64,000 nucleotides of DNA from Schmidtea polychroa (lineage: Eukaryota): the NCBI GenBank assembly GCA_044892525.1, contig CM097886.1, forward strand, positions 187,352,312 to 187,416,311, written 5' to 3'. Both the position numbers and the translations under genes were made by a program. Numbering within the stretch: position 1 is the stretch's first letter; every line of letters starts with the position of its first letter. Below, piece by piece: positions 2,616 to 58,500 of the stretch. The notes below the pieces were generated by a model. It worked only from the letters and a program-made list of their open reading frames with translations, made no database searches and was not told where the DNA came from.

Positions 2616-5600
2616 GTTATGGTGGAATTTTATTTGTTCTGACACTCGGCAACCAGAAAATGTCTTAAGGAATGGCCTAACAGAGGATTTGATCTGTGAG
2701 TGTTCCCTTTATTGGGTCAAGGCAAGGGCTATGTAGGAGACAGCGATTCATGCTGATAAAATGCACAATGATTGCAGCGCTTGTATGTGGTGGTAAGTGT
2801 TGTTGGAAGGTATGGTTGGAGGAGGGGCTGGGGAGGGGGGTATGTGAGGGGCATTGTGATGATCATTTATTGATGTACTGAAGTGACAAGCTGTGAACTT
2901 CGATATCAATTAGTTTCATGAGCTTCGGTGGTTTTGTCATGCCTCTTTGATAATTTATCTTAATTTCTCAATCCTCTTTAGAATGGTTGGCGGTTACCAA
3001 TCAGATGTCATCAAATTCTCCTCAATTATATTCCATGGCAAATTCACCCAATTTAATTCTAGGACAGGAGAGCAAGTGCAAGGTGGATATGGTTAATGGC
3101 CAACATTTCATTAATATTTCATGCGGGTGGACACGAGGATGAACAAATATGGACACCGTCATGGCAGGTAGCTCAGAAATATATGAACAGCATTGGCAAG
3201 CAGTATCTCACCAAGTAATTAATNNNNNNNNNNNNNNNNNNNNNNNNNNNNNNNNNNNNNNNNNNNNNNNNNNNNNNNNNNNNNNNNNNNNNNNNNNNNN
3301 NNNNNNNNNNNNNNNNNNNNNNNNNNNNNNNNNNNNNNNNNNNNNNNNNNNNNNNNNNNNNNNNNNNNNNNNNNNNNNNNNNNNNNNNNNNNNNNNNNNN
3401 NNNNNNNNNNNNNNNNNNNNNNNNNNNNNNNNNNNNNNNNNNNNNNNNNNNNNNNNNNNNTGAAAATGTCCATGAGAAACGTAATCCATAAGTAATATCG
3501 AGAGAGAGAGAGAGAGGAATTATTGTTGATGGCACAATATTGATGCTCGCCCCCCCTTCCTCATCCTCTCACACCCCCCTATCCCAACACCACTTCATAT
3601 AGAACAACTCATGCATATCTGTATCAGATCAGATGATTAGAGGCTGATAAGAATACATGAGAAAGAATGATAAAATCTCCTAGGACATCATTGACAATCA
3701 GATAGTAATATATTCATTCAATATGGCAAATCATGCAGATGAGGGGATAAGAATACTATTCAACTCATGCCGTTCATATCTGGTTGCCCAGTTGACATGA
3801 AATTAGGATATTTATTCTCACATATCAAGGAAATGATCATATGGTGTGAGGAATATGGATAAATAATGCCAAAGGTGGACACAGGCCTTGAGATGGAGCG
3901 GGCAATGAATATCACTAACCTGATTTATGAGCAATGCCTCCCATGACAATTCTCCCAACTATGACAGCCTCCTTCTCATTGCGTACAGTCGCGCCCTAAA
4001 TTATCATTCAAATTATTATTAATTCTATATCATGAAGAATAATAGAGCAACCAGAGGATGTTTGCCCTTTTCTAGCACAACAAATTTTATAGGAATGTCT
4101 CTGTCAGAGAGATGGATCTGTGTATAGCAGCCTTCTAATGGGGACTTGATAATGCGCACCGTATTTTCTGATTTCCTAGCCATTGATTTTGATCGCTCCT
4201 CTGAAACTGGACTCTTTAGTTCTGATTTTGTAGGAGAGCTTGGAGTGACATCTTGTTGAGTGAACTCGTTAATTTCTGAAATCCTCCGTTCCTCAATGCT
4301 AAAGGAAATGTTGGCACATTGGTCATTGGCGTAGCATAGAGCCTGAAAGGTACAGAAATGTATCACAGCGGATATGTCATTATATTGTGAATTGCACATA
4401 TCAAATTGACCAATAAAAATTTCAGAATATGAAGGCCAAAGGTTGAGGACAAATTTGATTGTTGATGTATGTGTAGAATCAATGAACTGTGCAAGGGATC
4501 ATTAATTATATATACTTCATAAAGATGGACAAATGAGAATGGTAAAGGAAAATAATGGAGAACCAAAATGAGCTATATACAGCCTACCCTGTCAATGGTG
4601 GCCATAGGCAATAGGGGACATTAGAATTGATTTCATAGGATTGATTTCATTGTTATTATTTATTAAAAGGCTTGATGATGATGAATCAGTAATATATCGA
4701 TGTGTTTTTGATATTCACGGATTTTCGGCACTGCCTTCTCAGGTGATTCTGATGAAATATTTGATCAATATATTTATTGATTTATTGTTTTCAAGCTTTT
4801 TAATAAATACTACGCAAAATATGTCAGTGGTGATATTTGAAAAAAACATTTTTATTATTGTTTATATTCATTAAATTTTAAAATTTGCCCATATATATAA
4901 TGAATCGAGAATTTGAAAATAAGAAAGATCAAACGAACAAAAAGAAAAGATTAACTATTCAACAAATGAGAGCCCTGTGGGAGCATATGGGAATCAGATC
5001 CAGATAAAAGGCATTTGGAACTTGCATTAAGCAGTATAAACTTGATGATGTTACAACAAAATCCAATAAAGAATAATGAAGAGAGAAATAAGAACAAAAC
5101 GGTCAGGACCAAATTCAAAATGATGGTGAATGGCTTCATTATAATCCAGGATATAAATCCTTTCACGAGATGGCATTAGAACTTTCCAAGCCTTTCGACG
5201 CCAATAATTGTAAAGCTTCAAATGGTTGGATCCAAAGATTTAAACAACGTCACAATATGACTAGTAAATTAATATCTGGCGAGGCTGGATCAGTAAATGA
5301 TAATGACATTGATCAATTCACAACGACCTATGGAAGTAAACTAAAGCAATATAACCCTAGCGATATTTACACCTTGGTTATCCTTTATATGTACTCCGTT
5401 GAGAACATTGGTGATGCAAGGAGGAGATCATGGGAGCAGGAAATGCTCAAAAGAGCGAATAACATAATGATTTGGGGTTAATTTAACTGGAGATAAACGA
5501 ACCCCATTGATGATAGGCAAGGCAAGAAATATAAATCGAATTGATGAGGATGGATGTCATGGGAGGTTTATTTAATGGCTAAGGAAATGGGCGGATAGGG

Positions 5601-8600
5601 AAATGTTATTAGCACTTGATGATGCTCCAGTTCATCCTCCCGTTCTCTTCTTCCCCCTTAATTGCACTTGCAATCATTCAGCCCCTTGACCAAGCAATGA
5701 GATGAAATTGAAGGATGATTGAATGATAATTGTTGATGCTTGGGAGGAGGTAAGAACGGAATCAGTGGCCAATTGCTTTCATAGCGCCATAAATAATTCT
5801 ACACTCGATACCAATGGCCTGCCGGAGCTTCTAGCTGGCATTGATGCAAATGTTCAACCATTGATATATGAAATATTGATCAAATAATAATAATGATTTC
5901 AGCTCTATCAATGAATAATATTTCACATTTTATCGATTGAATTGATCAGATCACATTTGATAGTGCAGTGCAATTGTGCAATTGACATACCAACTCAAGC
6001 CGTGATACATGATGTGATCGGTAGTAATATTGTTGATGCCGCTCATGCTCAGTGTTCCATTCATTCATTCGCTCATTCGCTCAGCGCGATATATTCGCCA
6101 ATTAACTCACACCCTCCACCACCCCCCCTCCATCCTTCTTATCTAGTAGCGATTGATTCATCTCAATCCGGAATTCGTTCAGAACTAGATGAATTAATAG
6201 ATTAGCAAATGTGTATACGACAGCAGTTGGATGACGATTGGGATGTTCATGATGGATTCCTATGGTAGCAGGTTGCATTGATTGTTCACTCGAGGTAATG
6301 GGGGAGGGGGAATTCCTTCTCTATCCCTAGATGATTGGATGGGTTACCAATATATCTATTTATGGTGCTCTCGCTTCCATTTCCATTTCCTTCACATGCT
6401 CACCATTATCACCGTGTTAAGCATTTGCATACCTGAATGCCTGGACCTCTGCTGCCAGTAATATAAAGGTGTAATGAACCACAATTAAGGTCACTAATCT
6501 GGACCCACCTTGTACCCTCCTGCCCAAGCTTTATTTGCCCAATGTTTCACCATCATTGATACATGATTAACAAATGAATGCAATCATTGCAATTATTCCA
6601 GCCGCTCTAGGAATGGCATTCCACAATAAATGCCACCATATCAGCATTCCCTATGGCAATAAATGCAGTGCCAGGCCAGATGTGCTGCACCCAGTTTATC
6701 ATAGGCTTTCATCAATTAATACCAAGAGGAGAGAAATGAGAATAAAAACTTCACTAATAAATTATTTGATGCTGTCAGTAGTATAATTAATTCTATTTCA
6801 GGTCACACATGTTTTCTCCCCCCCCCTTATTAGCACAATTCTATCAAATATATATTNNNNNNNNNNNNNNNNNNNNNNNNNNNNNNNNNNNNNNNNNNNN
6901 NNNNNNNNNNNNNNNNNNNNNNNNNNNNNNNNNNNNNNNNNNNNNNNNNNNNNNNNNNNNNNNNNNNNNNNNNNNNNNNNNNNNNNNNNNNNNNNNNNNN
7001 NNNNNNNNNNNNNNNNNNNNNNNNNNNNNNNNNNNNNNNNNNNNNNNNNNNNNNNNNNNNNNNNNNNNNNNNNNNNNNNNNNNNNNNNNNNNNNNNNNNN
7101 NNNNNNNNNNNNNNNNNNNNNNATGATATAAAACTAAATTATACAATGAGATATATAAATTGAGATAAATAAAAGAATGCTATGCTTCTATTTTCTACTT
7201 TCAACCAAATCCGAGCATATAATTATTATGTTGACTGATGGCGTGCAATAATAATATTATCATCATTATCTCAAGGGGTCTGAGACCTTCATTTCATAAC
7301 CAGCAGCAAGCTCCTAGTTTTATTCATATCATAAACATCGAGACTTCAGAATTTATATATTTTATAGGTTTAATTTACTTGACTTTCTTTTTTATAATAT
7401 TCANNNNNNNNNNNNNNNNNNNNNNNNNNNNNNNNNNNNNNNNNNNNNNNNNNNNNNNNNNNNNNNNNNNNNNNNNNNNNNNNNNNNNNNNNNNNNNNNN
7501 NNNNNNNNNNNNNNNNNNNNNNNNNNNNNNNNNNNNNNNNNNNNNNNNNNNNNNNNNNNNNNNNGTCCTATTTATTCCAAAACAAGATTTATTTGATCTT
7601 TCTGGTTGAATTTAACTTCTTCTCCTCTTGGTGTACAAATCCTATAAAGCATTTCCCATCAAATAAAAGGTGCTGTAATGCTCTAATGTATCCCAAAGGG
7701 ATGTCTAGGCCATGTTCCACATGTTAATGATGAATTGGATTAAATTATGATCTCAGGGTTAGATATGAGGGGCAATTTCATATATTCATGAAACGAATTG
7801 AATAGTTTCGTCAGATCCAAATAATTGTTGATCTCGTTCACTTATGGATTTCTGTAGCTCGCGCATAATATCATTTGTCATGCATGACCAGACACGGTCA
7901 GGAGAACCAATCGGAATGTTGTACGCATTTATACACATACACACACGCACACATACACGCAAATACTTAGTTCTCAATGTGCTCATGAACATATGGCTCA
8001 CATTTCAGCACCCCATGATCAATGCAGCCGTGAAAATCAACCGCCATAGCTAAGTATATGCACAAGTCCATAGAAAACCAATCAAAACAAAATTGAGAAA
8101 TAACAACAGAAACAATAATAAAAATTCCAAATCCAAATAATTTGATTGATAAAGGAAAAGATTAAGGGAAAATAAGGGGGGGGGGGGGGGGGTACTTGCT
8201 CAATTATCAAATAAAAGCTTACTTCCAAATCAGGATTTGACAACAGTTGGAGCAGCTCTTGCATTTGATATTTATAATGTGACTCTTTTGACTGTAAGTG
8301 ACCAGCGGACAGCGACGCGTTGACCTTCTTCAATTTCCGTTGTGCTGAAGATTTCCCTGACAATGGCGGATGGCCATAATTGGTCAAAATTTCATGAACC
8401 GCTATGCTCATCCGGTAGGAATCTTGGAATCCGTCGCTTTGCACATATTTCTGTAACCAGTCTAGGTCTGACTTGGAGAGAATGTTCCGATTGGGTTTGC
8501 GTTTGCAAAGAGCTTCCGTGAATCTGACAATATCTGCAAGGGATAACACACATTCAACTCTATTAGATAAATTAGATAATTATCAGGCTCATACTGTACA

Positions 8601-17430: not shown

Positions 17431-19300
17431 CATGCGTGTATGTGTGTGCTTGATGGGTTGCTGATTGTGTGTGCGTGTGTGTTTGATGGGTTGCTGATTG
17501 TGTGTATGCGCATGATGGGTTGGTGATTGTGTGTGTGTATTTGTTGGGTTGCTGATTGTGTGGGTATGCGCTTGATGGGTTGCTGATTGTGTGTATGCGC
17601 TTGATGGGTTGCTGATTGTGTGTGCGTGTGTGTTTGATGGGTTGGTGATTGTGTGTATGCGTGTGCTTGATGGGTTGCTGATTGTGCGTGTGTTTGATGG
17701 GTTGCTGATTGTGTGTATGCGCATGATGGGTTGGTGATTGTGTGTGCGTGTGCTTGATGGGTTGCTGATTGTGTGTGCGTGTGTGTTTGATGGGTTGCTG
17801 ATTGTGTGTGTGTTTGATGGGTTGCTGATTGCGTGTGTGTGTTCGATGGGTTGGTGTTTGTGTGTATGTGTGTGCTTGATGGGTTGCTGATTGTGTGTGC
17901 ATGTGTGTTTGATGGGTTGCTGATTGTGTGTATGCGCATGATGGGTTGGTGATTGTGTGTGTGTATTTGTTGGGTTGCTGATTGTGTGGGTATGCGCTTG
18001 ATGGGTTGCTGATTGTGTGTATGCGCTTGATGGGTTGCTGATTGTGTGTGCGTGTGTGTTTGATGGGTTGGTGATTGTGTGTATGCGTGTGCTTGATGGG
18101 TTGCTGATTGTGCGTGTGTTTGATGGGTTGCTGATTGTGTGTATGCGCATGATGGGTTGGTGATTGTGTGTGTGTATGCTTGATGGGTTGCTGATTGTGT
18201 GTGCGTGTGCTTGATGGGTTGCTGATTGTGTGTGCGTGTGTGTTTGATGGGTTGCTGATTGTGTGTGTGTTTGATGGGTTGCTGATTGCGTGTGTGTGTT
18301 CGATGGGTTGGTGTTTGTGTGTATGCGTGTGCTTGATGGGTTGCTGATTGTGCGTGTGTGTGCTTGATGGGTTGCTGATTGTGTGTGCGTGTGTGTTTGA
18401 TGGGTTGCTGATTGTGTGTGGTTGATGGGTTGCTGATTGTGCGTGTGTTTGATGGGTTGCTGATTGTGTGTATGCGCATGATGGGTTGGTGATTGTGTGT
18501 GTGTATTTGTTGGGTTGCTGATTGTGTGTGCGTGTGTGTTTGATGGGTTGGTGATTGTGTGTATGCGTGTGCTTGATGGGTTGCTGATTGTGTGTATGCG
18601 CATGATGGGTTGGTGATTGTGTGTGTGTATGCTTGAAGGGTTGCTGATTGTGTGTGCGTGTGTGTTTGATGGGTTGGTGATTGTGTGTATGTGTGTGCTT
18701 GATGGGTTGCTGATTGTGCGTGTGTGTGCTTGATGGGTTGCTGATTGTGTGTATGCGCATGATGGGTTGGTGATTGTGTGTGTGTATTTGTTGGGTTGCT
18801 GATTGTGTGTGTGTATTCTTGATGGGTTGCTGATTGTGTGTGCGTGTGTGTTTGATGGGTTGGTGATTGTGTGTGTGTGTGTATTAGATGGGTTGGTGAT
18901 TATGTGTGTATTTTTGGGTTGGTGATTGTGTGTGTGTGTGATTGAGGGGTTGCTGATTGTGTGTGTGTGATTGAGGGGTTGCTGATTGTGTGTGTGTGTG
19001 CTTGATGGGTTGCTGATTGTGTGCGTGTGCTTGATGGGTTGCTGATTCTGTGCGTGTGTGCTTGATGGGTTGCTGATTGTGTGCGTGTGCTTGATGGGTT
19101 GCTGATTGTGTGCGTGTGCTTGATGGGTTGCTGATTCTGTGCGTGTGTGCTTGATGGGTTGCTGATTGTGTGTGTGTGATTGAGGGGTTGCTGATTGTGT
19201 GTGTGTGTGCTTGATGGGTTGCTGATTGTGTGCGTGTGCTTGATGGGTTGCTGATTCTGTGCGTGTGTGTATTTATTGAGTTGGCGATTGTGTGTGTGTG
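17431..19300. repeat. ~30-bp compound satellite: TTGATGGGTTGCTGATT core plus variable (TG/CG)n
   Basis: Direct repetition starting ~190 bp after the GSK3 stop; explains ORFs 17250..18479, 17422..18603, 17426..18760, 18884..19342. Confidence 0.95.
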
Positions 19301-19599
19301 TGCTTTCATAAAGATTTCATATACAAATTTTAATGAAAACAAGAAAAGAACAATAAAACGAATTTACTTGAATTTTTTTAATTTTTATATTTATTTGACA
19401 CTTTTTTTCGATATGAGCAGGAATTGATGAGGTAGCTACAACGTAGGCAGCTTTCTAATCCTATATCAGTCAATCTTGATCGGTGGTCATTTGTGATTAA
19501 TTTCATAACTAAGACTAATACGTACGTCCGATCAGAGGCGTCATTTGCTTGGCAATTTGGGTGAGAAAGCGGACATTTCTCAGGGCTCACATACGATAT

Positions 19600-21385: not shown

Positions 21386-22908
21386 TCAAGCAAGTATAAA
21401 AAGGAAAAAAGCCATCAAAATGTAAAATTAGAGCCGTAACAAGGCATATTGCAAAGCCGTCAAAGGGCACAATATAAAGCTATTACAAGACACAATCAAA
21501 AGCCACTACAAGGCATAATAAAAAGCCATAACAAGGCACACAATATGGTTATCGGTTCAAATCCTTTAAGGGTATTTTTGAAGTACATATTTTGTCTAAA
21601 TTTTCCCTTTTGACGTTCAAATATTTCAAAGTCACTTAAAGGTTTACTAGGTGTAGGCATCTGGGTTTGGTTACAGAGTGGAGGTGGTTCACTGAATGAT
21701 GCGGCTTGGGTAATAGGTGCAATCATTGGTTGAGTATCATTGAGATTTATACTCTTTGGTCAATTTGAAAAACTGGAGGTGATATATTGTTAATTAATGG
21801 TTTGGTAATTGGTAGTAGTAATCTAGATAGATTGATTGTCACTAGGTGATTTATAAGTTACAATAAGTGGAGATGGTTTAGAGTAGTGGGGTCTAGATGA
21901 GTTATCTATGTTAAAAATTGGGGTAGTAGGGCTTCTAGGTTTAATGTTTTAGGTAATTTTGTATAGGGAGTGAAGATTGAGATTCGCTCATGGTTATCTG
22001 AATAGGTTTGGAATAGTGTAGTCTTGGTGAGCGATTGACGTTTAAAATAGGTGAAAGTTTAATCTTATGAAACAGGAGTTACTTATGTTGTTATAATTTA
22101 AAATAAAAAAGTAGTCAATAATAATATTAGGGTTGTCTTTTAATTGTTTGCGGATATCAAAAAAACTGTTTGCTTAATAGTTAGTAAAGTTATTAAGGTT
22201 GGACGAGATTGGTTTTACGTTAGATAAAAAGGGCCGTGCATGGTATGGTTTTACTGGATCTAGTACTTTGACAAGTTTAGCAAGTATTTATGGTTAATGT
22301 CATCGAAAAAAATTTCAAAAATATCACGTTTTGTATAATTTGTATTAAATTGATATTCAATATCTAAGAAAAATGTATTACCTATTAGCTGGGATACCTG
22401 GCGTTGCATGATTTAAAAAATAGTAAACAGATTCAAAATAAAGAAATTTTTTTCAATTCATTCATTTAAAAAAAATTTAAAAAATACATAAAAGTTTATT
22501 AAAAAAAAGTACGTTATTTATATATCACTTATGATAAAGCTTGACGATAGATTATAATTTCGGTTTTTTCTTCTGGTGCAAAAGAAACATAGTGTTTAAT
22601 GCGCGTCTGTGTGCGCTTTTCTTTTCTTTGTTTTGGTTGTGTGCACACACAGACGCGTAAGAATGTGGATGGCAATAAAAAAATAACAATCATAGGATAC
22701 CTTTAAAGTTGATGCAACCGAATGTTTAAGTTAGCTCAATCCGCGTCTGTGTGCGCATGCCTTTTGTTTTGAGTTATTTGGCATTGTTCGAATGGATTTA
22801 TTTTGAATTGAGGTTTTGTCGAATGATTTGGAATTTTTGAATTTTACTGAACATATTCTTTGAATTTAACGATTTCTCTTCGATTTTGTTTGGAATTTTT
22901 TGTTTGGA

Positions 22909-23532
22909 ATGGCAACATCTAAATATAACGGGGGATTGATGGATCTCGATGATTTAGTGGCAAGGTTGAATAGAACCCGCAGCAAACTGGCAATAGAAAC
23001 TATTTGTAAAGACGATGTTATCAGATCTAGCAAATCTCTTAAAATTCTGAGTAATGGATTCTCTCTAATCACATTACCTCGAGACCGACAATTAGTTCAA
23101 TCTGTACCTGGTGAATTGAATATGGATCAAACAAATTTGTTGAAATGTGCTCAAGATCAAAATGGCCGAATCGATATTGTTTTGTGCTCAGAAAGGAATA
23201 ATATGAGATCAAATTTATGTGTAGCTACACGAAGACAGGTTCCAGATAAAATGATTGAGAAGAGTTCAGCTACAAGATTGTTTAATATTACTGAAAGTAC
23301 TGAAAATGATATGACTGGTATGATCCCTGATTATCGAGCTCAAGTATGTCGTGCACAAATGGAAGCAGCTCGATTTAGATATAAACATGGATATGAAATG
23401 CCTTGCGACATTATGACGTTATCTTATGATCTGGACATTGACAAATGGTTATTAGATGGAAATAAAATGATTATGTGTTATTATGAATTTAAAAATGAAC
23501 ACATAGCATATGACCTTTCCCGAGTCACATGA
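22909..23532 (+). CDS. Chimeric ORF: SNF8/VPS22 internal fragment (22909-23172) + proteasome alpha-6/PSMA6 internal fragment (23218-23415) + unidentified tail
   Basis: MATSKYNGGL..LDDL...DDVIRS.K.LK.L.NGF......LVQSVPGELNMD matches SNF8. TRRQVPDK.IE.SS.T.LF.ITE....MTGM.PD.RAQV.RAQ.EAA.FRYK.GYEMP.D.M matches PSMA6. No stop between them. Confidence 0.8.
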   Translation: MATSKYNGGLMDLDDLVARLNRTRSKLAIETICKDDVIRSSKSLKILSNGFSLITLPRDRQLVQSVPGELNMDQTNLLKCAQDQNGRIDIVLCSERNNMRSNLCVATRRQVPDKMIEKSSATRLFNITESTENDMTGMIPDYRAQVCRAQMEAARFRYKHGYEMPCDIMTLSYDLDIDKWLLDGNKMIMCYYEFKNEHIAYDLSRVT

Positions 23533-23694
23533 GCATACTACAACGCCCTAGGTTCAACGCTGGGGAATTCTATGGATAACAAACAAACAAACCTTCATCT
23601 TTATATATTAGAATTTTAGATATTTTATCTTTATGAATATTAGTGAAATTAATAGGTACATAAAGTACCACGCATGGGGATCAGTAATTCTTTA

Positions 23695-31311: not shown

Positions 31312-31810
31312 GACACGACTTGTTTGTATTTTTACTATTTATTATTATTTTTATGTTTTTTATTATAATATATTAGATTTTAATGACTTAACTTATTTCT
31401 TATTATTATTTTATTTATTTTCTTATTTTTATTATTTTCCTCCTATTTTTCCTGTGGATTTATTGCTACTTTATTGTAATATAATTTTTTGTTTTAATTA
31501 GACTTAAAGATAGTTTTATTTTTATTTATTTCTTAAATTTCTCGTTTATTTGTTGTCACTTTTTTACTTATTCTATTCTATTTCATCTGCTGGGTCCTAA
31601 ATCGCTTTATTTCTAAATCTTAAGGGGTTTATTGGGTTTTATTTAGTTTGTTTTACTTATTCTTATTCTCTTATTGATATTTTATTGTTCCTTTTTGATT
31701 TATTAGTGAGAATTTGATGGTACTTTATATTTTTATTTTATTTCGTTTATTTTTCAAGGATTACTTTTCTATTCGCTCCAGTTTTCGAAACTCCGCGTTT
31801 TAGCCCAACA

Positions 31811-33650
31811 CATCTAAATCAAAATATTACGCAATTAACATATAAATCAAAATATTACATAATTAACATATAAATCAAAATATTACATAATTAACATCTA
31901 AATCAAAATATTACGCAATTAACATATAAATCAAAATATTACGTAATTAGTGTCTAAATCAAAATATTACATAATTAACATATAAATCAAAATATTACAT
32001 AATTAACATCCAAATCAAAATATTGCGTAATTAGCATCTAAATCAAAATATTGCACAATCAACATCCAAATCAAAATATTGCGTAATTAACACCCAAATC
32101 AAAATATTACGCAATTAACATATAAATCAAAATATTACGTAATTAACATCTAAATCAAAATATTACATAATTAGTGTCTAAATCAAAATATTACGCAATT
32201 AACGTATAAATCAAAATATTACGTAATTAGTGTCTAAATCAAAATATTACATAATTAACATATAAATCAAAATATTACGTAATTAGTGTCTAAATCAAAA
32301 TATTACATAATTAACATATAAATTAAATTATTACACAATCAACATCCAAATCAAAATATTGCGTAATTAACATCTAAATCAAAATATTGCGTAATTAACA
32401 TCTAAATCAAAATATTACGCAATTAACATCTAAATCAAAATATTGCGCAATTAACATCTAAATCAAAATATTGCGTAATTAACATCCAAATCAAAATATT
32501 GCGTAATTAGCATCTAAATCAAAATATTGCACAATCAACATACAAATCAAAATATTGCGTAATTAACACCCAAATCAAAATATTGTGTAATCAACATCTA
32601 AATCAAAATATTACGTAATTAACATCTAAATCAAAATATTACGTAATTAACATTTAAATCGAAATGTTACGTAATTAACATATAAATCAAAATATTACGT
32701 AATTAACATATAAATCAAAATATTACGTAATTAACATATAAATCAAACTATTACGTAATTAACATATAAATCAAAATATTACGTAATTAACATCTAAATC
32801 AAAATATTGCGTAATTAACATCTAAATCAAAATATTGCGTAATTAACATCCAAATCAAAATATTACATAATTAACATCTAAATCAAAATATTGCGTAATT
32901 AACATCTAAATCAAAATATTGCGTAATTAACATCCAAATCAAAATATTACGTAATTAGCATCTAAATCAAAATATTGCGTAATTAACACCCAAATCAAAA
33001 TATCGCGTAATTAACACCCAAATCAAAATATTGCGTAATCAACATCTAAATCAAAATATTGCGTAATTAACATCCAAATCAAAATATTGCGTAATTAGCA
33101 TCTAAATCAAAATATTGCGTAATTAACATCCAAATCAAAATATTGCGTAATTAGCATCTAAATCAAAATATTGCGTAATTAACATATAATTCAAATTATT
33201 ACGCAATCAACACCTAAATCAAAATATTATACAATTGACACCCAAATCAAAATATTGCGCAATCAACATCCAAACCAAAATATTGCGTAATTAACATCTA
33301 AATCAAATTATTGCGTAATTAACATCTAAATCAAAATATTACATAATTAACATCTAAATCAAAATATTACATAATTAACATATAAATCAAAATATTACAT
33401 AATTAACATCTAAATCAAAATATTACATAATTAACATCCAAATCAAAATATTGCGTAATTAACATATAAAGCAAAACATTGCGTAATTAACATATTAATC
33501 AAAATATTACGCAATCAACACCTAAATCAAAATATTGCGCAATCAACATCTAAATCAAAATATTACATAATTAACACCTAAATCAAAATATTACGCAATC
33601 AACACCTAAATCAAAATATTATACAATTAACATTTATACCAAAATATTAC
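31811..33650. repeat. 28-bp satellite AAATCAAAATATT(A/G)C(G/A)(T/C)AATTAACAT(C/A)T, roughly 65 units
   Basis: Direct repetition. Confidence 0.97.
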
Positions 33651-33804
33651 ATAATAAAATCTGTTTATAAATTAATGTCTAAAATCAGATAAAACATCAC
33701 ACAATTCAATATTTATTGTCACATGAAATTGGTTTGTGTGAGTTGGGATTTAATCTTCCTAATATGTAAACGCGATATTTTCCTGGCTCAGTCCTGCAGT
33801 ATTT

Positions 33805-36750: not shown

Positions 36751-39624
36751 TAGACTTTACTAGTTAAATAAAAACTTTAATCAAAAATAAAATTTAAACT
36801 TTAAGTTAATAAACTTTAATGCAAACTTAACTAAAACTTAAAAAAAAAGAAAAGAAAAAAACATTAAAAACTTTAAAAAGAAAAAAATAAAACTTTAATG
36901 AAACTACAAAAAAAAAACAAAAAAAATTTTAAAAACAAAACTTTTAAAAGAAACAAAAACAAAAAACAAAAACAAAAACATATGATTAACTTACAGTAAA
37001 ATAGTATTACCTTCCTCAACTAAATTAAATCCCTAACATTATTAAATTGTTATAAAAAAAGCATGTTTAAAATAAAAAAAAATAAAATAAATCAATATAA
37101 AGTGTAACCTGCCTCAATTGACATAATTCCCTAACACTATATGATACCTGAATAAAATGAGTAGGTTAACGACTTTGGCAGACTAGTATTATTAATAGTA
37201 ATATCGTCATAGTTACTCAGCCTTTTACCAAAGTATAGAGGAATTACTTCTTTAAAGCATCCCGTCATTAAGAATAAAATAAATTATTAAAATTATATAA
37301 AATAACAATAAAAAGATGAAAATAAAAAAGATCGTGGAGGTGGCCCTTGTGTGTGCCTAGAATGTTAGATCAGTCATTCTAGGACTTATTACCCTTTATA
37401 CCGATTTAACTAGAAGTAGCGAACAACCTTGTAAAATCACCAGGGTACCCAACATTCAAATCGGCGTGGGAAACCATCTGGATGTGCCCCACCTTGGCGA
37501 AGGAATCGGATTCCCCGGCATTTTTGGCACATACAGATATCGACGCTTCGTGCTTTTAAGGGCACAGGCCGTACGAATTACCCACCCAAAACACAATAAA
37601 GGCTTTTCAGTTCTGATTTCAAAACTTTCCAGTCACTTTGATATTTTGGGTCGCCCTCGTTTCCAAGCACTTGTCATTACCTGACCAATGGGCATCAATT
37701 TCTTATAGAAGGTTGTTGATTGCGACACCTTGTCCCACCATCCTAAGACGGTGGGTTGTGCTCCGTAAGGAGACAGGTCTTTTCGGAACCCATAAACAGT
37801 TAAAGGGCGTATATCCCCTTCCCAATCACCCGAAGGTAGTTAGGTGTACTTCGTAAACGAAGCCAAGTCTTTGTAGACTTAAGTATCAAAGCCGTTATCA
37901 GCCAATACTTTGTAACAACCGGTGTAAGCGTCTCTAGCAGGTGGATCCCCCATGCCAGATCTTCTTACGTCCTGTTAAGTTTCTATCCTTGCGTTAGCTA
38001 TTCGCAATTCTGATACTTAGGACTACATACAATTCCAGACATAATTTCAACCTTATCATCTCCTGGGAAGCTCTCTTTTAGCAGGGACTCTAACCCCCGA
38101 ACGTTCTTAGCCAGCAAGTTTCAAAACTTTAACTTTCCAGAGGTATCTATTTAAAGGGCGGAAAATCCCCGAACGATTTGCCCCAGATAGTTGTCTCCAT
38201 TATTCTTGAATATTTACGTTTTAGGAGTAGGATACTCTTTTTTTTGGAAATGTAAATTACTGCAGTACGTGCCACAGCTGTCTTAAACCATTTAACGAGT
38301 TTAGTTTTGTTGCATTAATTACTAATTACTAATTAATTACTAAGTATGCCACCACCAGGAATCGTGATAATCAGCTGTATTTTTCCCCAACCAACTACAT
38401 GTGGATTCCTGTTTTTGTTTTTGTTAGAGTTGTTTGCTGTCGTAGAACACGACATTACCGGCTGGCCCACGGAGAGGGCACACTAATCAAACGACTTGAG
38501 CCTATTCGTCCAGCTTAAGTTTAGTCTCGTTATATGCACCAACCAACTACTGTAGTCAATTAAAGACACATTACTGACGTAATATAATTAGCCTGCCCTC
38601 AAGACAAGCTTGAGGTCAGTATAAAGTCGGTCAACCCAACCTCCGAGGAGGGTTACATGCAACTAGTACTGTGCAGACAAATTACTCTTAAGATAGTCCT
38701 AGATATTATGATTTTTCTCTTTTTTTATCTCATTGAACGCTTTTCTCAAATGAGGTGAAACTCCCTCAAGACAGCTCACTTTAAGGTACGATATACTAGT
38801 ACCCTAGCTTGATAAACTATCCTCACTTTTGTTTTAGTAGATTATCGCATGATAATTCTATCAATTTTTCTCTTTCGATTGTTGACAGCTCAAATTCCTC
38901 TTCTTCATTGTCGATAAATGGATTCTGTACGCACAAAACTTTGAGAAATCGAGATCTTTGAAATAATTTGTATAATGCAACACCAAACCATCCAAGTGTT
39001 CAATAAAAAGATTTCTGTATTTTAGTTTGTCTTATCTTATTCCAGACATCCTCCTGGCTAATTTCATCACCACATCTTTTATTTCCAAATTAAATTAAAG
39101 TAAGCATAAATAATACATGGCATAGAATTCATAATTATCATTTTTGATTAACTGAACCAATTTCTCCTACTCAAGTCTCTCATCACATTTCATTTCAGTC
39201 CTACTGCTACCTCACGACAGATACACTATTTCCAGCTACTCCCATTAGAACTGTTGTTATAAAGTTTGGACTTTCCTAACTGGCTGCGCCCTACATGACT
39301 TGATTTCCCAATTTCATACATCTGAATTTCAAAAATCTCCTGCTGGATAATTATTTTCTCCTCAACATCGAAACTATTCCTGCATCCATCCTTTCATCTC
39401 CGTTTCAAATCTATCTCTAATTTATCCGAACTACTCGATCTGTCAATTCACTGAATATTTCTTCAATTTTTCTCGATTCGGAATCTAGCCAAGTCAAGCG
39501 ACTAGTTTCTCTTAGTCTAACCTCATGGATTTTTCTGGATGCCTCTTTTCATAATTCTACAACTCATCATATTTATATAGTTATCATACTATCATTAAAT
39601 AATTGATTCAATACTGTTATCATC

Positions 39625-40373
39625 AAATCCATAATTCGATCTATCATATTATCATTAAATCCATAATTCGATCTATCATATTATCATTAAATCCATAATT
39701 CGATCTATCATATTATCATTAAATCCATAATTCGATCTATCATATTATCATTAAATCCATAATTCGATCTATCATATTATCATTAAATCCATAATTCGTT
39801 CTATCATATTATCATTAAATCCATAATTCGATCTATCATATTATCATTAAATCCATAATTCGATCTATCATAATATCATTAAATCCATAATTCGATCTAT
39901 CATATTATCATTAAATCCATAATTCGATCCATCATATTATCATTAAATACATAATTCGATCTATCATATTATCATTAAATATATAATTCGATCTATCATA
40001 TTATCATTAAATATATAATTCGATCTATCATATTATCATTAAATATATAATTCGATCTATCATATTATCATTAAATCCATAATTCGATCTATCATATTAT
40101 CATTAAATATATAATTCGATCTATCATATTATCATTAAATATATAATTCGATCTATCATATTATCATTAAATATATAATTCGATCTATCATATTATCATT
40201 AAATATATAATTCGATCTATCATATTATCATTAAATATATAATTCGATCTATCATATTATCATTAAATCCATAATTCGATCTATCATATTATCATTAAAT
40301 CCATAATTCGATCTATCATATTATCATTAAATATATAATTCGATCTATCATATTATCATTAAATATATAATTC
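39625..40373. repeat. 32-bp satellite TCCATAATTCGATCTATCATATTATCATTAAA, ~23 units; final unit continues at 44501-44527
   Basis: Direct repetition with a 32-bp offset (39661 to 39693). Confidence 0.97.
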
Positions 40374-55544: not shown

Positions 55545-58500
55545 ATATTTATCAACCATATTTATCAACCATATTTATCAACCATATTTATCCACAATAT
55601 TTATCCACAATATTTATCCACAATATTTATCCACAATATTTATCAACAATATTTATCCACAATATTTATCCACAATATTTATCAACCATATTTATCAACA
55701 ATATTTATCCACAATATTTATCAACCATATTTATCAACAATATTTATCAACAATATTTATCCACAATATTTATCAACAACATTTATCAACAACATTTATC
55801 AACCATATTTATCCACAATATTTATCCACAATATTTATCAACCATATTTATCAACAATATTTATCCACAATATTTATCAACAATATTTATCAACAATATT
55901 TATCCACAATATTTATCAACCATATTTATCAACAATATTTATCCACAATATTTATCAACCATATTTATCAACAATATTTATCAACAATATTTATCCACAA
56001 TATTTATCAACAACATTTATCAACAACATTTATCAACCATATTTATCCACAATATTTATCCACAATATTTATCAACCATATTTATCAACAATATTTATCC
56101 ACAATATTTATCAACCATATTTATCAACAATATTTATCAACAATATTTATCCACAATATTTATCAACAACATTTATCAACAACATTTATCAACCATATTT
56201 ATCCACAATATTTATCCACAATATTTATCAACAATATTTATCAACAATATTTATCCACAATATTTATCAACCATATTTATCAACAATATTTATCCACAAT
56301 ATTTATCAACCATATTTATCCACAATATTTATCCACAATATTTATCCACAATATTTATCCACAATATTTATCAACCATATTTATCCACAATATTTATCCA
56401 CAATATTTATCCACAATATTTATCAACAACATTTATCCACAATATTTATCCACAATATTTATCCACAACATTTATCCACAATATTTATCCACAATATTTA
56501 TCAACCATATTTATCCACAATATTTATCCACAATATTTATCAACAATATTTATCCACAATATTTATCCACAATATTTATCAACAACATTTATCAACAATA
56601 TTTATCCACAATATTTATCCACAATATTTATCAACAACATTTATCCTCAATATTTATCAACCATATTTATCAACCATATTTATCCACAATATTTATCCAC
56701 AATATTTATCAACCATATTTATCCACAATATTTATCCACAATATTTATCCACAATATTTATCAACCATATTTATCCACAATATTTATCCACAATATTTAT
56801 CAACAACATTTATCCACAATATTTATCAACAACATTTATCAACAATATTTATCCACAATATTTATCAACAATATTTATCCACAATATTTATCAACAACAT
56901 TTATCCACAATATTTATCCACAATATTTATCAACAACATTTATCCACAATATTTATCCACAATATTTATCCACAATATTTATCCACAATATTTATCCACA
57001 ATATTTATCAACAATATTTATCCACAATATTTATCCACAATATTTATCAACAATATTTATCAACAATATTTATCAACAATATTTATCCACAATATTTATC
57101 CACAATATTTATCCACAATATTTATCCACAATATTTATCCACAATATTTATCCACAATATTTATCCACAATATTTATCCACAATATTTATCCACAATATT
57201 TATCAACAATATTTATCCACAATATTTATCCACAATATTTATCAACAATATTTATCAACAATATTTATCAACAATATTTATCAACAACATTTATCAACAA
57301 TATTTATCCACAATATTTATCCACAATATTTATCCACAATATTTATCCACAATATTTATCCACAATATTTATCAACAATATTTATCAACAATATTTATCA
57401 ACAATATTTATCAACAATATTTATCAACAACATTTATCCACAATATTTATCCACAATATTTATCCACAATATTTATCAACAATATTTATCAACAATATTT
57501 ATCAACAATATTTATCAACAATATTTATCCACAATATTTATCCACAATATTTATCAACAATATTTATCCACAATATTTATCAACAATATTTATCAACAAT
57601 ATTTATCAACAACATTTATCCACAACATTTATCAACAATATTTATCCACAATATTTATCAACAACATTTATCCACAATATTTATCCACAATATTTATCAA
57701 CAATATTTATCCACAATATTTATCAACAATATTTATCAACAATATTTATCAACAATATTTATCCACAATATTTATCCACAATATTTATCCACAATATTTA
57801 TCCACAATATTTATCAACAATATTTATCAACAACATTTATCCACAACATTTATCAACAACATTTATCCACAATATTTATCCACAATATTTATCCACAATA
57901 TTTATCCACAATATTTATCAACAATATTTATCAACAATATTTATCAACAATATTTATCAACCATATTTATCCACAATATTTATCCACAATATTTATCCAC
58001 AATATTTATCCACAATATTTATCAACAATATTTATCAACAATATTTATCAACAATATTTATCAACAACATTTATCAACAACATTTATCCACAATATTTAT
58101 CCACAATATTTATCCACAATATTTATCAACAATATTTATCAACAACATTTATCCACAATATTTATCCACAATATTTATCCACAATATTTATCAACAATAT
58201 TTATCAACAATATTTATCAACAATATTTATCCACAATATTTATCAACAATATTTATCAACAACATTTATCCACAATATTTATCCACAATATTTATCCACA
58301 ATATTTATCAACAATATTTATCAACAACATTTATCCACAATATTTATCCACAACATTTATCCACAATATTTATCCACAATATTTATCCACAATATTTATC
58401 AACAATATTTATCAACAATATTTATCAACAACATTTATCAACAACATTTATCCACAATATTTATCCACAATATTTATCCACAATATTTATCAACAATATT

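What the first reader, a model, noticed from the sequence alone, without database searches (positions are those of the whole stretch)
22909..23532. Stop-free fusion ORF of SNF8 (ESCRT-II), proteasome alpha-6 and an unknown tail
About 88 codons of SNF8's winged-helix region run in frame through a ~15-codon linker into ~66 codons of PSMA6, then ~38 unidentified codons. An internal SNF8 Met serves as the start, and both pieces are internal and intron-free. Such mosaics are known products of Helitron or Pack-element capture and of template-switch retroposition. An uninterrupted 207-codon frame across the junctions in AT-rich DNA raises the possibility of a new chimeric gene. Some PSMA6 positions look degraded (ESTENDM for ENIGCVM).
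Basis: partly seen in the sequence, partly recalled or inferred. Interest (0 to 1): 0.75.

Follow-up and report, generated by a model that had tools for sequence, protein, structure and literature searches.

The report
Solo retrotransposon LTR carrying captured gene fragments
The SNF8-proteasome "fusion gene" is real sequence, but it is one of well over a thousand copies of a planarian retrotransposon's long terminal repeat, here left behind as a lone repeat, so it is a mobile-element relic and not a new host gene.

Summary
Window 22909-23532 (+) is an open 207-codon frame whose first half matches SNF8 and whose second half matches proteasome alpha-6 (PSMA6).

The "new chimeric gene" reading does not hold. 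The ORF lies in a 909-bp solo LTR (22593-23501, TG...CA) flanked by a 5-bp target-site duplication (CATAG). A paralogous uninterrupted copy of the surrounding repeat confirms the empty site. The last 10 codons are flanking DNA.

The genome holds at least 150 scored copies (1,500-2,300 first-look candidates). Full elements have two 862-bp LTRs that are 99.9-100% identical, an 18-nt primer-binding site matching the genome's own tRNA-Met(CAU), a polypurine tract, and one 1,146-1,153-aa ORF. That ORF runs SNF8 piece, PSMA6 piece, spacer, ubiquitin, then a BEL/Pao-type Gag. Longer copies with the same LTR carry an integrase.

Both fragments come from this genome's own genes. SNF8 copies are 94-98.6% identical to the parent. 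The PSMA6 piece lacks a 43-bp parental intron exactly, so it was copied from spliced mRNA.

The captured pieces evolve near neutrally (omega about 0.65, not significantly below 1). Ubiquitin-Gag is constrained (omega 0.31).

The capturing element is an LTR retrotransposon, not a Helitron or Pack element. This scan already noted the family on other DNA of this genome (s1-223883).

The parts
22588..22592 (.). Left copy of the 5-bp target-site duplication (CATAG)
   Evidence: Sequence read directly. In a paralogous uninterrupted copy of the host repeat, the left-flank and right-flank matches overlap by exactly these 5 bp (G000:C2:133831149-133831351 and 133831347-133831467).
22593..23501 (+). Solo LTR, 909 bp, TG...CA, of a BEL/Pao-type LTR retrotransposon family
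   Evidence: Aligns from its first TG to its last CA with both LTRs of full-length copies. No internal (gag) sequence occurs anywhere in the 64-kb window. Identical 5-bp repeats flank it.
22602..22657 (.). Inverted-repeat motif (CGCGTCTGTGTGCGC ... GCACACACAGACGCG) near the LTR's 5' end. A further arm lies at 22742-22757. Present, often duplicated, in all LTR subfamilies. Function unknown; it lies in the upstream part of the LTR where a promoter would be expected.
22909..23532 (+). The 207-codon ORF of the finding. It starts 317 bp into the LTR, leaves the LTR after codon 197 and ends in flanking DNA.
22907..23202 (+). Segment copied from the host SNF8 (ESCRT-II) gene, parental codons about 107-205 of 244. 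Firm homology runs to about 23194. Covers roughly one winged helix plus the start of the second.
   Evidence: 279 of 295 nt identical to the parental single-exon gene L044 1450..2184 (-) = G000:C2:132561686-132562357. Other copies are 94-98.6% identical and share the same 3' junction.
23203..23220 (+). 18-nt filler of unknown origin between the two captured pieces
   Evidence: Neither parent matches here. Loose ends of parental transcripts and contigs diverge at 23194 and 23221.
23221..23454 (+). Segment copied from spliced host PSMA6 mRNA. 23221-23393 comes from exon 2 (93% identical). The exon-exon joint lies at 23390-23393. 23390-23420 comes from exon 3. 23419-23454 comes from distal exon 3, after an in-frame internal deletion.
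   Evidence: Aligned to the true PSMA6 gene L074 (G000:C1:117274429-117277590, +). Its 43-bp GT..AG intron is precisely absent from the element copies.
23455..23501 (+). The LTR's own 3' terminal segment (encodes NKMIMCYYEFKNEH, ends ...TGAACA)
   Evidence: Shared with all LTR subfamilies. In 5' LTRs of full elements it is followed directly by the primer-binding site.
23502..23506 (.). Right copy of the 5-bp target-site duplication (CATAG)
23502..23532 (+). Last 10 codons plus the stop of the ORF, encoded by flanking DNA (another dispersed repeat), not by the element
   Evidence: the right flank has about 1,000 first-look candidates of its own in the genome.

Best explanation
Window 22593-23501 is a solo LTR of a high-copy, recently active BEL/Pao-type LTR retrotransposon family. 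The genome is that of a planarian, almost certainly Schmidtea polychroa assembly schPol2.

Inferred history: during reverse transcription in this lineage, template switches onto co-packaged host mRNAs placed a piece of spliced PSMA6 mRNA into the part of the LTR that lies downstream of the promoter region. A piece of SNF8 mRNA followed later.

In intact elements, the frame that opens at SNF8's internal Met runs through the PSMA6 piece, the LTR end, the tRNA-Met primer-binding site and an AT-rich spacer. It then continues into a captured ubiquitin and the Gag protein. The two gene pieces therefore form the head of the element's long reading frame.

Each piece is an incomplete domain and evolves almost neutrally. 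They are best read as passengers that mostly just stay in frame. Ubiquitin-Gag is under purifying selection.

At this locus an element inserted into another repeat and duplicated CATAG. Recombination between its two LTRs then presumably removed the interior and left one LTR. The 207-codon ORF is the decapitated head of the element's ORF, closed by the first stop in the flanking DNA.

Shown: LTR identity and boundaries, TSD and empty site, copy number, the parental genes, intron loss, and selection contrasts.
Inferred: template switching as the capture mechanism, LTR-LTR recombination as the origin of the solo LTR, translation starting inside the LTR, and lack of function of this copy.
For: Structure:
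- TG..CA ends, the 5-bp TSD and alignment to both LTRs of full copies.
- A paralogous empty site in which the two flank matches overlap by exactly 5 bp.
- No internal element sequence in the window.

Family:
- 154 protein-level matches from 1,495 candidates and 2,330 DNA candidates. Copies come in same-strand pairs about 3.9 kb apart, and the first of each pair opens frames of 1,148-1,421 aa.
- Full copies L041-L043 have 862-bp LTRs identical at 861-862 of 862 positions, with TSDs CATAC and ATTAT.
- The PBS TGGTAGCAGAGCGTGGTT is 18/18 complementary to the 3' end (with CCA) of tRNA-Met(CAU) genes of this genome.
- A polypurine tract sits directly before the 3' LTR.
- The long ORF carries ubiquitin (E 9e-23) and DUF1759 Gag (E 2e-12), plus a sub-threshold CCHC zinc-knuckle hit (E 0.069, 13.7 bits, under Pfam's 20.8-bit cut-off); two Cys-His motifs are visible in the translated ORF.
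- The same LTR flanks 6.6-7.2-kb-spaced copies with a 483-aa integrase (DUF5641, E 1e-23).

Origin of the pieces:
- SNF8 parent: 244 aa, single exon, 94.6% identical to this copy and up to 98.6% to others, with one shared 3' junction.
- PSMA6 parent: has introns, and the 43-bp intron is removed exactly in the element copies.

Selection:
- 28 stop-free LTR ORFs (of 30 distinct; the two with a stop were left out): omega 0.65, LRT against omega=1 gives 2dlnL 2.98 (chi-square, 1 df: p about 0.08).
- Long copies: leader 0.67 and spacer 0.85 (both not significant); ubiquitin-to-Gag 0.31 (2dlnL 27.5).
- Pairwise pN/pS: 0.59-0.94 for the leader regions against 0.34-0.41 for ubiquitin, linker and Gag.
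- L009 and L010, the two LTRs of one element, share the same frameshift. A copy with a broken leader was therefore still copied.

This copy:
- In the runs guessed to be RNA, the subfamily-specific tail 23422-23523 has depth 1-10, against hundreds to thousands over the shared part. The unique flanks have depth 0.

Genome identity:
- Contig C2 is 189,691,935 bp, equal to the N50 of schPol2. Totals are 781.27 Mb in 1,012 contigs against 781.29 Mb in 1,013.
Against: - The transcription start inside the LTR was not mapped. Whether the SNF8 ATG lies in the mRNA leader (R-U5) or in U3 is inferred only from the frame staying open into Gag in several subfamilies.
- The copies compared were the best-scoring 40-150 of at least 1,500. 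That biases them toward intact frames.
- Omega of 0.65 with p about 0.08 does not exclude weak constraint on the leader.
- All read evidence is from assembled contigs of runs whose RNA or DNA nature is a guess. 'Not expressed' is therefore weak.
- A solo LTR keeps its promoter region, so low-level transcription of this ORF remains possible.
Confidence: 0.85

Rival explanations
1. The SNF8 and PSMA6 pieces are working modules of the element. Translated at the head of the ubiquitin-Gag polyprotein, they would recruit or jam ESCRT-II and the proteasome to help particle assembly or protect Gag.
For: - In several LTR subfamilies the frame from the LTR ATG to Gag is open over 1,148-1,421 codons, despite different in-frame indels in the AT-rich spacer.
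- No frameshifting indels in 45 of 47 LTR ORFs examined.
- Omega point estimates lie below 1 (0.59-0.67 for SNF8 and the leader).
- ESCRT and ubiquitin are the host systems that retroviral Gag proteins use for budding (general knowledge).
Against: - Both pieces are partial domains: EAP30 profile positions 102-201 of 219 and Proteasome positions 17-82 of 189.
- Subfamilies have deleted different amounts of PSMA6, and one has replaced the SNF8 start.
- Omega is not significantly below 1, while ubiquitin-Gag in the same copies is clearly constrained.
- An element whose two LTRs share a frameshift in the leader was still copied (L009/L010).
- The copy sample is biased toward intact frames.
Confidence: 0.1
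2. The window copy has been co-opted as a new host gene. The solo LTR's promoter would drive a 207-aa SNF8-PSMA6 chimeric protein.
For: - The frame is intact, with an ATG inherited from SNF8.
- Solo LTRs generally keep promoter sequences (general knowledge).
- The family is abundant in runs guessed to be RNA.
Against: - It is one of at least 1,500 near-identical candidates.
- Among the copies compared it is one of the most diverged from the SNF8 parent (94.6%; only L022 is lower, at 93.9%).
- It carries clustered changes at conserved PSMA6 positions (ESTENDM against ESTGCVM in the parent).
- Its intactness is expected by chance with probability about 0.2-0.3.
- The copy-specific tail and unique flanks are nearly or wholly absent from the RNA-guessed runs.
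- The C-terminus is arbitrary flanking repeat DNA.
Confidence: 0.04
3. The mosaic was made by a Helitron or a Pack-type DNA transposon, or is an assembly chimera.
For: Such elements are known to capture gene fragments.
Against: - The termini are TG..CA direct LTRs with a 5-bp TSD, a PBS and a polypurine tract. There are no TC..CTRR ends, no A|T insertion site and no terminal inverted repeats.
- The captured PSMA6 lacks an intron, which shows an RNA intermediate.
- The junction is present in hundreds of copies and in independent runs and assemblies.
Confidence: 0.01

Closest known systems
Maize Bs1 LTR retroelement (host gene fragments transduced into a hybrid ORF with gag)
   Same: An LTR retroelement lacking pol that carries intron-free pieces of several host genes fused into one reading frame with its gag, acquired through RNA. 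Described in PMC13317346, which cites Jin & Bennetzen 1994 and Elrouby & Bureau 2001 and 2010.
   Different: - The host here is an animal (a planarian) and the backbone is BEL/Pao.
- The SNF8 and PSMA6 pieces lie inside the LTR itself and upstream of gag, so every solo LTR carries the chimeric ORF.
- Copy number is in the thousands, whereas Bs1 is, as I recall, a low-copy element.
- A complete ubiquitin is also fused to Gag.
LTRs remodelled by aberrant template switching (barley BARE-2, wheat Veju TRIM)
   Same: Foreign sequence was introduced into the LTR region during reverse transcription of co-packaged RNAs, founding a new LTR subfamily (PMC13317346).
   Different: In those cases the inserted sequence comes from another retroelement or is of unknown origin and non-coding. 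Here it consists of coding pieces of two identified host genes kept in frame.
BEL/Pao LTR retrotransposons of metazoans
   Same: - DUF1759-type Gag; its CCHC zinc-knuckle Pfam hit is below the curated threshold (E 0.069), though the Cys-His motifs are visible in the translation.
- DUF5641-bearing integrase.
- TG..CA LTRs with a 5-bp TSD.
- PMC3118150 reports only 21 BEL/Pao copies, in two families, in Schmidtea mediterranea.
   Different: - Canonical members carry no host gene fragments in their LTRs and have no ubiquitin-headed Gag.
- Most copies here are gag-only derivatives of about 4.8 kb.
- RT and protease membership was not tested here.
Host ubiquitin insertions in cytopathic pestivirus (BVDV) genomes
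   Same: Host ubiquitin mRNA is recombined into a polyprotein so that cellular ubiquitin hydrolases can cut after the C-terminal Gly-Gly. This is recalled from general knowledge and not checked in a paper here. The element's ubiquitin keeps ...RLCGG directly before the Gag part.
   Different: That is an RNA virus rather than a retrotransposon. Cleavage here is only a hypothesis, and the ubiquitin lies outside this window's solo LTR.

Membership tests
LTR retrotransposon (solo LTR) | Sequence collinear, end to end, with the long terminal direct repeats of full-length elements; TG...CA termini | tested here: met
   Window 22593-23501 aligns with both LTRs of L042 and with LTRs in L002-L043. It starts TG and ends CA. 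Full copies have 862-bp LTR pairs that are 99.9-100% identical.
LTR retrotransposon (solo LTR) | Short target-site duplication flanking the insertion, with an empty site elsewhere | tested here: met
   CATAG lies on both sides. Flank matches in the paralogous repeat copy G000:C2:133831149-133831467 overlap by exactly 5 bp. Full copies have 5-bp TSDs CATAC and ATTAT.
LTR retrotransposon (solo LTR) | No internal region (PBS, gag, pol, polypurine tract) next to the LTR | tested here: met
   A blastn of a full element against the whole window finds only the LTR part. 23502 onward is a different dispersed repeat.
LTR retrotransposon family (full elements) | Primer-binding site complementary to a tRNA 3' end directly after the 5' LTR, and a polypurine tract directly before the 3' LTR | tested here: met
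   An 18-nt PBS after the LTR's CA matches the 3' end plus CCA of tRNA-Met(CAU) genes found in this genome. AAGGGGGGAGGA precedes the 3' LTR.
BEL/Pao superfamily | Gag of DUF1759 type with zinc knuckles; pol with Peptidase_A17, RT, RNase H and an integrase followed by DUF5641 | tested here: inconclusive
   Gag DUF1759 (E 2e-12); the CCHC zinc-knuckle hit is below threshold (E 0.069, 13.7 bits against a 20.8-bit cut-off). Integrase with DUF5641 (E 1e-23) and a sub-threshold H2C2 hit lies just upstream of the 3' LTR in a long copy.
SNF8/VPS22 (ESCRT-II subunit) | Complete EAP30 domain (N-terminal helices plus two winged helices) | tested here: not met
   Only profile positions 102-201 of 219 are present, equal to parental codons about 107-205 of 244. 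The true gene lies elsewhere (L044).
Proteasome alpha subunit (PSMA6) | N-terminal alpha signature plus the full roughly 189-position proteasome fold | tested here: not met
   Only profile positions 17-82 of 189 are present, plus a short distal stretch after a deletion. The true four-exon gene is L074.
Helitron / Pack-type DNA transposon capture | Helitron: TC...CTRR ends with a 3' hairpin, inserted between A and T without a TSD. Pack-TIR: terminal inverted repeats | tested here: not met
   TG...CA direct repeats and a 5-bp TSD. No inverted terminal repeats were found in a full copy.
RNA-mediated (retro) capture of host genes | The captured copy lacks the parental introns exactly | tested here: met
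   For PSMA6, the 43-bp GT..AG intron of L074 is absent as one clean gap, and the longer PSMA6 family also lacks intron 1. SNF8 is uninformative because the parent is a single exon.
Functional protein-coding gene (this copy) | Purifying selection on the amino-acid sequence, and copy-specific expression | tested here: not met
   Omega is 0.65-0.67, not significantly below 1. The copy-specific tail and unique flanks are near zero in the RNA-guessed runs (weak, contigs only).

The most novel reading that the evidence does not exclude
The leader is really translated. The element would make an SNF8-PSMA6-spacer-ubiquitin-Gag polyprotein from an ATG inside its LTR, and host deubiquitinases would cut after the retained ...RLCGG. 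The captured ubiquitin would then act as a built-in processing site that frees Gag and tolerates (or exploits) an ESCRT-II/proteasome-derived head. The hundreds of solo LTRs, this one included, would then be ready-made promoter-plus-ORF cassettes able to express truncated SNF8-PSMA6 peptides from many loci.
Probability: 0.12. Interest if true: 0.6.

Novelty: new member of a known kind. Interest (0 to 1): 0.33.

Why it matters
For annotation: in this planarian genome, well over a thousand SNF8-like and proteasome-like ORFs are LTR copies, not genes. Gene predictors and orthology pipelines will mis-call them. There is a single SNF8 gene (C2:132.56 Mb) and a single intact PSMA6 gene (C1:117.27 Mb); a second, stop-containing PSMA6 C-terminal match lies on C3 (L075).

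For mobile-element biology: this is a clean, datable animal example of an LTR retrotransposon picking up spliced host mRNAs. That process is documented mainly in plants. Here the cargo sits inside the LTR, so it is propagated even by solo LTRs.

The contrast within one reading frame is useful. The captured pieces drift while ubiquitin-Gag is constrained, which shows which acquisitions the element uses.

The genome paper for this assembly leaves the identification of expanded transposon families as future work (PMC11410931).

Tried and rejected
- A new single-copy chimeric gene: rejected on copy number, solo-LTR structure and selection tests.
- Helitron or Pack capture: rejected on termini and TSD.
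- Mis-assembly: rejected because the junction recurs in many copies and in independent runs.
- Using SNF8 intron positions to prove retro-capture: uninformative, because the parental gene is intronless.
RT and protease and a full census were therefore not done.
- Public-protein search with the ORF: only one near-copy (an ENA contig) and a tapeworm SNF8. Planarian proteins are largely absent from that database.
- Read laying gave only short collapsed contigs. It could not show transcript starts, strand or level. A joint 22474>23582 in one X1 contig does not match the LTR edges and probably comes from another copy of the flanking repeat.
- The first attempt at look-up of sequencing runs failed because the machine was busy. 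One paper search was rejected for a slash in a term.
- An early script printed nothing.
Full report
**1. Observation**

Window 22900/22909-23532 (+) is an uninterrupted frame of 210 or 207 codons.
- Pfam places EAP30 (the SNF8/VPS22 family) on residues 2-103: E 2.3e-9, profile positions 102-201 of 219.
- Pfam places Proteasome on residues 104-167: E 2.9e-8, profile positions 17-82 of 189.
- Solved structures give PSMA6 residues 49-115 (E 5e-16) and human SNF8 residues 112-195 (E 8e-12).

The details differ: the linker is 18 nt, and about half of the 'unknown tail' can be identified (section 4).

**2. It is a repeat**

A DNA search of the window's own genome (781 Mb, four chromosome-size contigs) returned 69 matches from 2,330 first-look candidates. 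The protein search returned 154 matches from 1,495 candidates, almost all without stops.

Matches come in same-strand pairs about 3.9 kb apart. The upstream member of a pair opens a frame of 1,148-1,421 codons; the downstream member closes after about 200.

A full copy (L042) shows the anatomy:
- Two 862-bp direct repeats (2880-3741 and 6796-7657), TG...CA, identical at 861 of 862 positions.
- A 5-bp duplication (CATAC) on both sides.
- Directly after the 5' repeat, the 18-nt string TGGTAGCAGAGCGTGGTT.
- Directly before the 3' repeat, a purine run (AAGGGGGGAGGA).
- L043 has the same structure (TSD ATTAT). L041 is a tandem LTR-interior-LTR-interior array.

The 18-nt string is perfectly complementary to the 3' end (with CCA) of tRNA-Met(CAU) genes, which occur in tandem arrays in this genome. 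From its sequence features this looks like the initiator tRNA; that is my own reading.

The 1,146-aa ORF (3170-6610) contains, in order:
- the SNF8 piece and the PSMA6 piece;
- an AT-rich spacer that includes the primer-binding site;
- a complete ubiquitin (E 9e-23) ending ...RLCGG;
- a coiled linker;
- a DUF1759 Gag (E 2e-12), followed by two Cys-His motifs visible in the translation; the Pfam CCHC zinc-knuckle hit itself is below threshold (E 0.069).

There is no pol in these 4.8-kb copies. However, LTRs of the same type also bracket 6.6-7.2-kb intervals. In one of them, the DNA just upstream of the 3' LTR encodes a 483-aa integrase with DUF5641 (E 1e-23) and a sub-threshold H2C2 zinc-finger match (E 4.7e-4, below Pfam's cut-off).

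This is therefore a BEL/Pao-type LTR retrotransposon family with autonomous and gag-only members.

**3. The window copy is a solo LTR**

The window aligns with family LTRs from the TG at 22593 to the CA at 23501, a length of 909 bp. CATAG lies immediately outside both ends (22588-22592 and 23502-23506). Nothing else of the element occurs in the 64 kb.

Both flanks belong to another dispersed repeat (588 and 1,032 candidates). In one uninterrupted paralogue:
- the left-flank match ends at G000:C2:133831351;
- the right-flank match begins at 133831347.

That is a 5-bp overlap, exactly as expected for an empty site with a 5-bp target duplication.

A contig of run X1 crosses the left edge without a difference (22451-22622).

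The ORF starts 317 bp into the LTR, leaves it after codon 197, and takes its last 10 codons and its stop from the flank.

**4. Where the pieces came from**

*SNF8.* The parental SNF8 gene (L044 1450..2184, minus strand; G000:C2:132561686-132562357) is a single 244-codon exon.
- Window 22907-23202 matches its codons about 107-205, with 279 of 295 nt identical. The ORF's ATG is SNF8 Met107.
- Across 50 element copies, identity to the parent ranges from 93.9 to 98.6%.
- The 3' junction is the same in all copies. The 5' extent varies between codons 92 and 111. This indicates one capture followed by 5' erosion.
- The window copy is among the most diverged.

*PSMA6.* The true PSMA6 gene was found using the C-terminus of a tapeworm orthologue. 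It is L074 (G000:C1:117274429-117277590), with short introns.
- Its 43-bp GT..AG intron between the codons for ...KNGY and EMPCD... is missing from the element copies as one clean gap. The exon-exon joint falls at window 23390-23393. The cargo was therefore copied from spliced mRNA.
- Window 23221-23393 is 93% identical to exon 2.
- 23390-23420 and 23419-23454 derive from exon 3, on either side of an in-frame deletion. LTR subfamilies retain or have deleted different amounts of this region.

*A separate family.* A much larger LTR family (1,376 first-look candidates) carries a longer PSMA6 piece of about residues 1-190, also intron-free and about 98% identical to the parent. It shares the palindromic 5' motif and the terminal NKI.V...F.N motif. 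PSMA6 therefore entered this LTR lineage first, or more than once, and SNF8 later replaced its 5' part.

**5. Is the chimeric part under selection?**

| Data set | Region | omega or pN/pS | Test against omega=1 |
|---|---|---|---|
| 30 distinct LTR ORFs (159 codons) | SNF8+PSMA6 | pN/pS 0.70 | - |
| 28 stop-free of those 30 | SNF8+PSMA6 | omega 0.65 | 2dlnL 2.98 (p about 0.08) |
| Long copies, several subfamilies | leader | omega 0.67 | 2dlnL 0.86 |
| Long copies | spacer | omega 0.85 | 2dlnL 0.15 |
| Long copies | ubiquitin to Gag | omega 0.31 | 2dlnL 27.5 |

Pairwise counts agree: SNF8 0.59, PSMA6 0.94 and spacer 0.79, against ubiquitin 0.34, linker 0.34 and Gag 0.41.

Frames are rarely broken. 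Two of the 30 distinct ORFs have a stop, and indels are almost all multiples of three. The copies compared were the best-scoring ones, however.

One element (L009/L010) carries the same frameshift in both LTRs. A broken leader did not prevent its copying.

For the window copy alone, about 30-40 substitutions since capture, 4.3% of them stop-creating, leave the frame open with probability about 0.2-0.3. No selection is needed to explain it.

Both pieces are incomplete domains. I read them as passengers.

**6. Expression**

Only assembled contigs were available, and the RNA or DNA nature of the runs is a guess.
- The family, the parental SNF8 and the parental PSMA6 are all visible in the RNA-guessed runs. 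The parents show up as loose ends that continue into parental sequence at 22908, 23194 and 23221.
- The chimeric joint is bridged in X7 and, in a second organism label, in X14.
- The stretch specific to this copy's subfamily (23422-23523) has depth 1-10, against hundreds to thousands over the shared part.
- The unique flanks have depth 0 in those runs and about 22-65 in the probable DNA run X1.

There is no sign that this locus is expressed, but the test is weak.

**7. Identity of the genome**

- Closest public SNF8 and PSMA6 proteins are from flatworms.
- Contig C2 is 189,691,935 bp long. That equals the N50 given for the Schmidtea polychroa assembly schPol2 in PMC11410931.
- That assembly has 781,290,622 bp in 1,013 contigs; the genome here has 781,270,316 bp in 1,012 contigs.
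- The paper does not mention proteasome or gene-fragment-bearing LTRs and leaves the identification of expanded transposon families as future work.
- An older survey found only 21 BEL/Pao copies in S. mediterranea (PMC3118150).

**8. Comparison with known systems**

Capture of host gene fragments by LTR retroelements through transduction or aberrant template switching is established. Examples are maize Bs1, the rice and sorghum surveys, BARE-2 and Veju (PMC13317346). This family belongs to that kind.

Its particular features are:
- an animal host and a BEL/Pao backbone;
- cargo placed inside the LTR and in frame with Gag;
- very high copy number;
- a complete ubiquitin heading Gag.

I reached mine before seeing it and tested its claims here.

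**9. Verdict**

The mechanism is partly as proposed: RNA-mediated mosaic capture, but by an LTR retrotransposon. The 'new gene' reading is not supported. The locus is a solo LTR and is ordinary as a locus. The family behind it is moderately interesting.

Noticed in passing
L060-L073 (e.g. G000:C1:170162518-170162958, C2:148405017-148405475): A second, larger LTR family (1,376 first-look candidates for the Proteasome profile) carries a longer intron-free PSMA6 piece of about residues 1-190. It is about 98% identical to the parental gene and sits in ORFs of 160-300 aa. It shares only the palindromic 5' motif and the terminal motif with the SNF8-PSMA6 LTR. It is either the ancestor of that LTR or a separate, more recent capture.
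   Followed up: partly
L042:3170-6610 (and L005, L018, L031, L033): In full elements a complete ubiquitin (ending RLCGG, followed by NDEE...) sits between the leader and Gag and is under purifying selection. A Met lies 9-11 codons upstream of it. Cleavage by host deubiquitinases would free Gag with an N-terminal Asn.
   Followed up: partly
L076 (G000:C1:79395653-79398725); also C359:9289-11642: Tandem arrays of tRNA-Met(CAU) genes with a period of about 450 bp, seven in 3 kb. Some copies have single-base indels. Their 3' end is the element's primer-binding partner.
   Followed up: partly
L041 (G000:C2:5694000-5703999; LTR ORFs at C2:5698391, 5702308, 5706225): An LTR-interior-LTR-interior-LTR tandem array of the gag-only element, with a PBS after the second LTR as well. 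It suggests unequal recombination or concatemer integration.
   Followed up: no
L009/L010 (G000:C3:69038894-69043303): Both LTRs of one element share the same frameshift in the SNF8 part. The break therefore predates that insertion, which implies mobilisation in trans.
   Followed up: partly
window 55545-64000: A satellite of a 13-bp unit (ATATTTATCCACA), about 650 copies, 94% matching, with no G on the + strand. It runs off the end of the window.
   Followed up: no
window 17437-19305; 31810-33662; 39617-40373: Three minisatellite arrays with 29/60/89-bp, 28-bp and 32-bp units. The first is TG-rich and accounts for the strong GC/AT skew at 16-20 kb.
   Followed up: no
window 22380-22592 and 23502-23625: The solo LTR is nested in another dispersed repeat, with 588 and 1,032 first-look candidates at about 80-90% identity. 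That repeat was not classified.
   Followed up: no
L075 (G000:C3:79621453-79624617): A second PSMA6-like locus that includes the C-terminal part not carried by the LTRs, with in-frame stops. It is probably a decayed PSMA6 pseudogene or retrocopy.
   Followed up: no
window 23301-23309: Clustered changes, three of them G-to-A, turn the conserved ESTG(C/G)VM of PSMA6 and of other copies into ESTENDM in this copy only.
   Followed up: no
run X14 ('organism B'): A 525-nt contig from a run labelled as a different organism covers 22874-23302 across the SNF8|PSMA6 joint, with 22 differences and 11 gaps. The family probably also exists in a related species.
   Followed up: no
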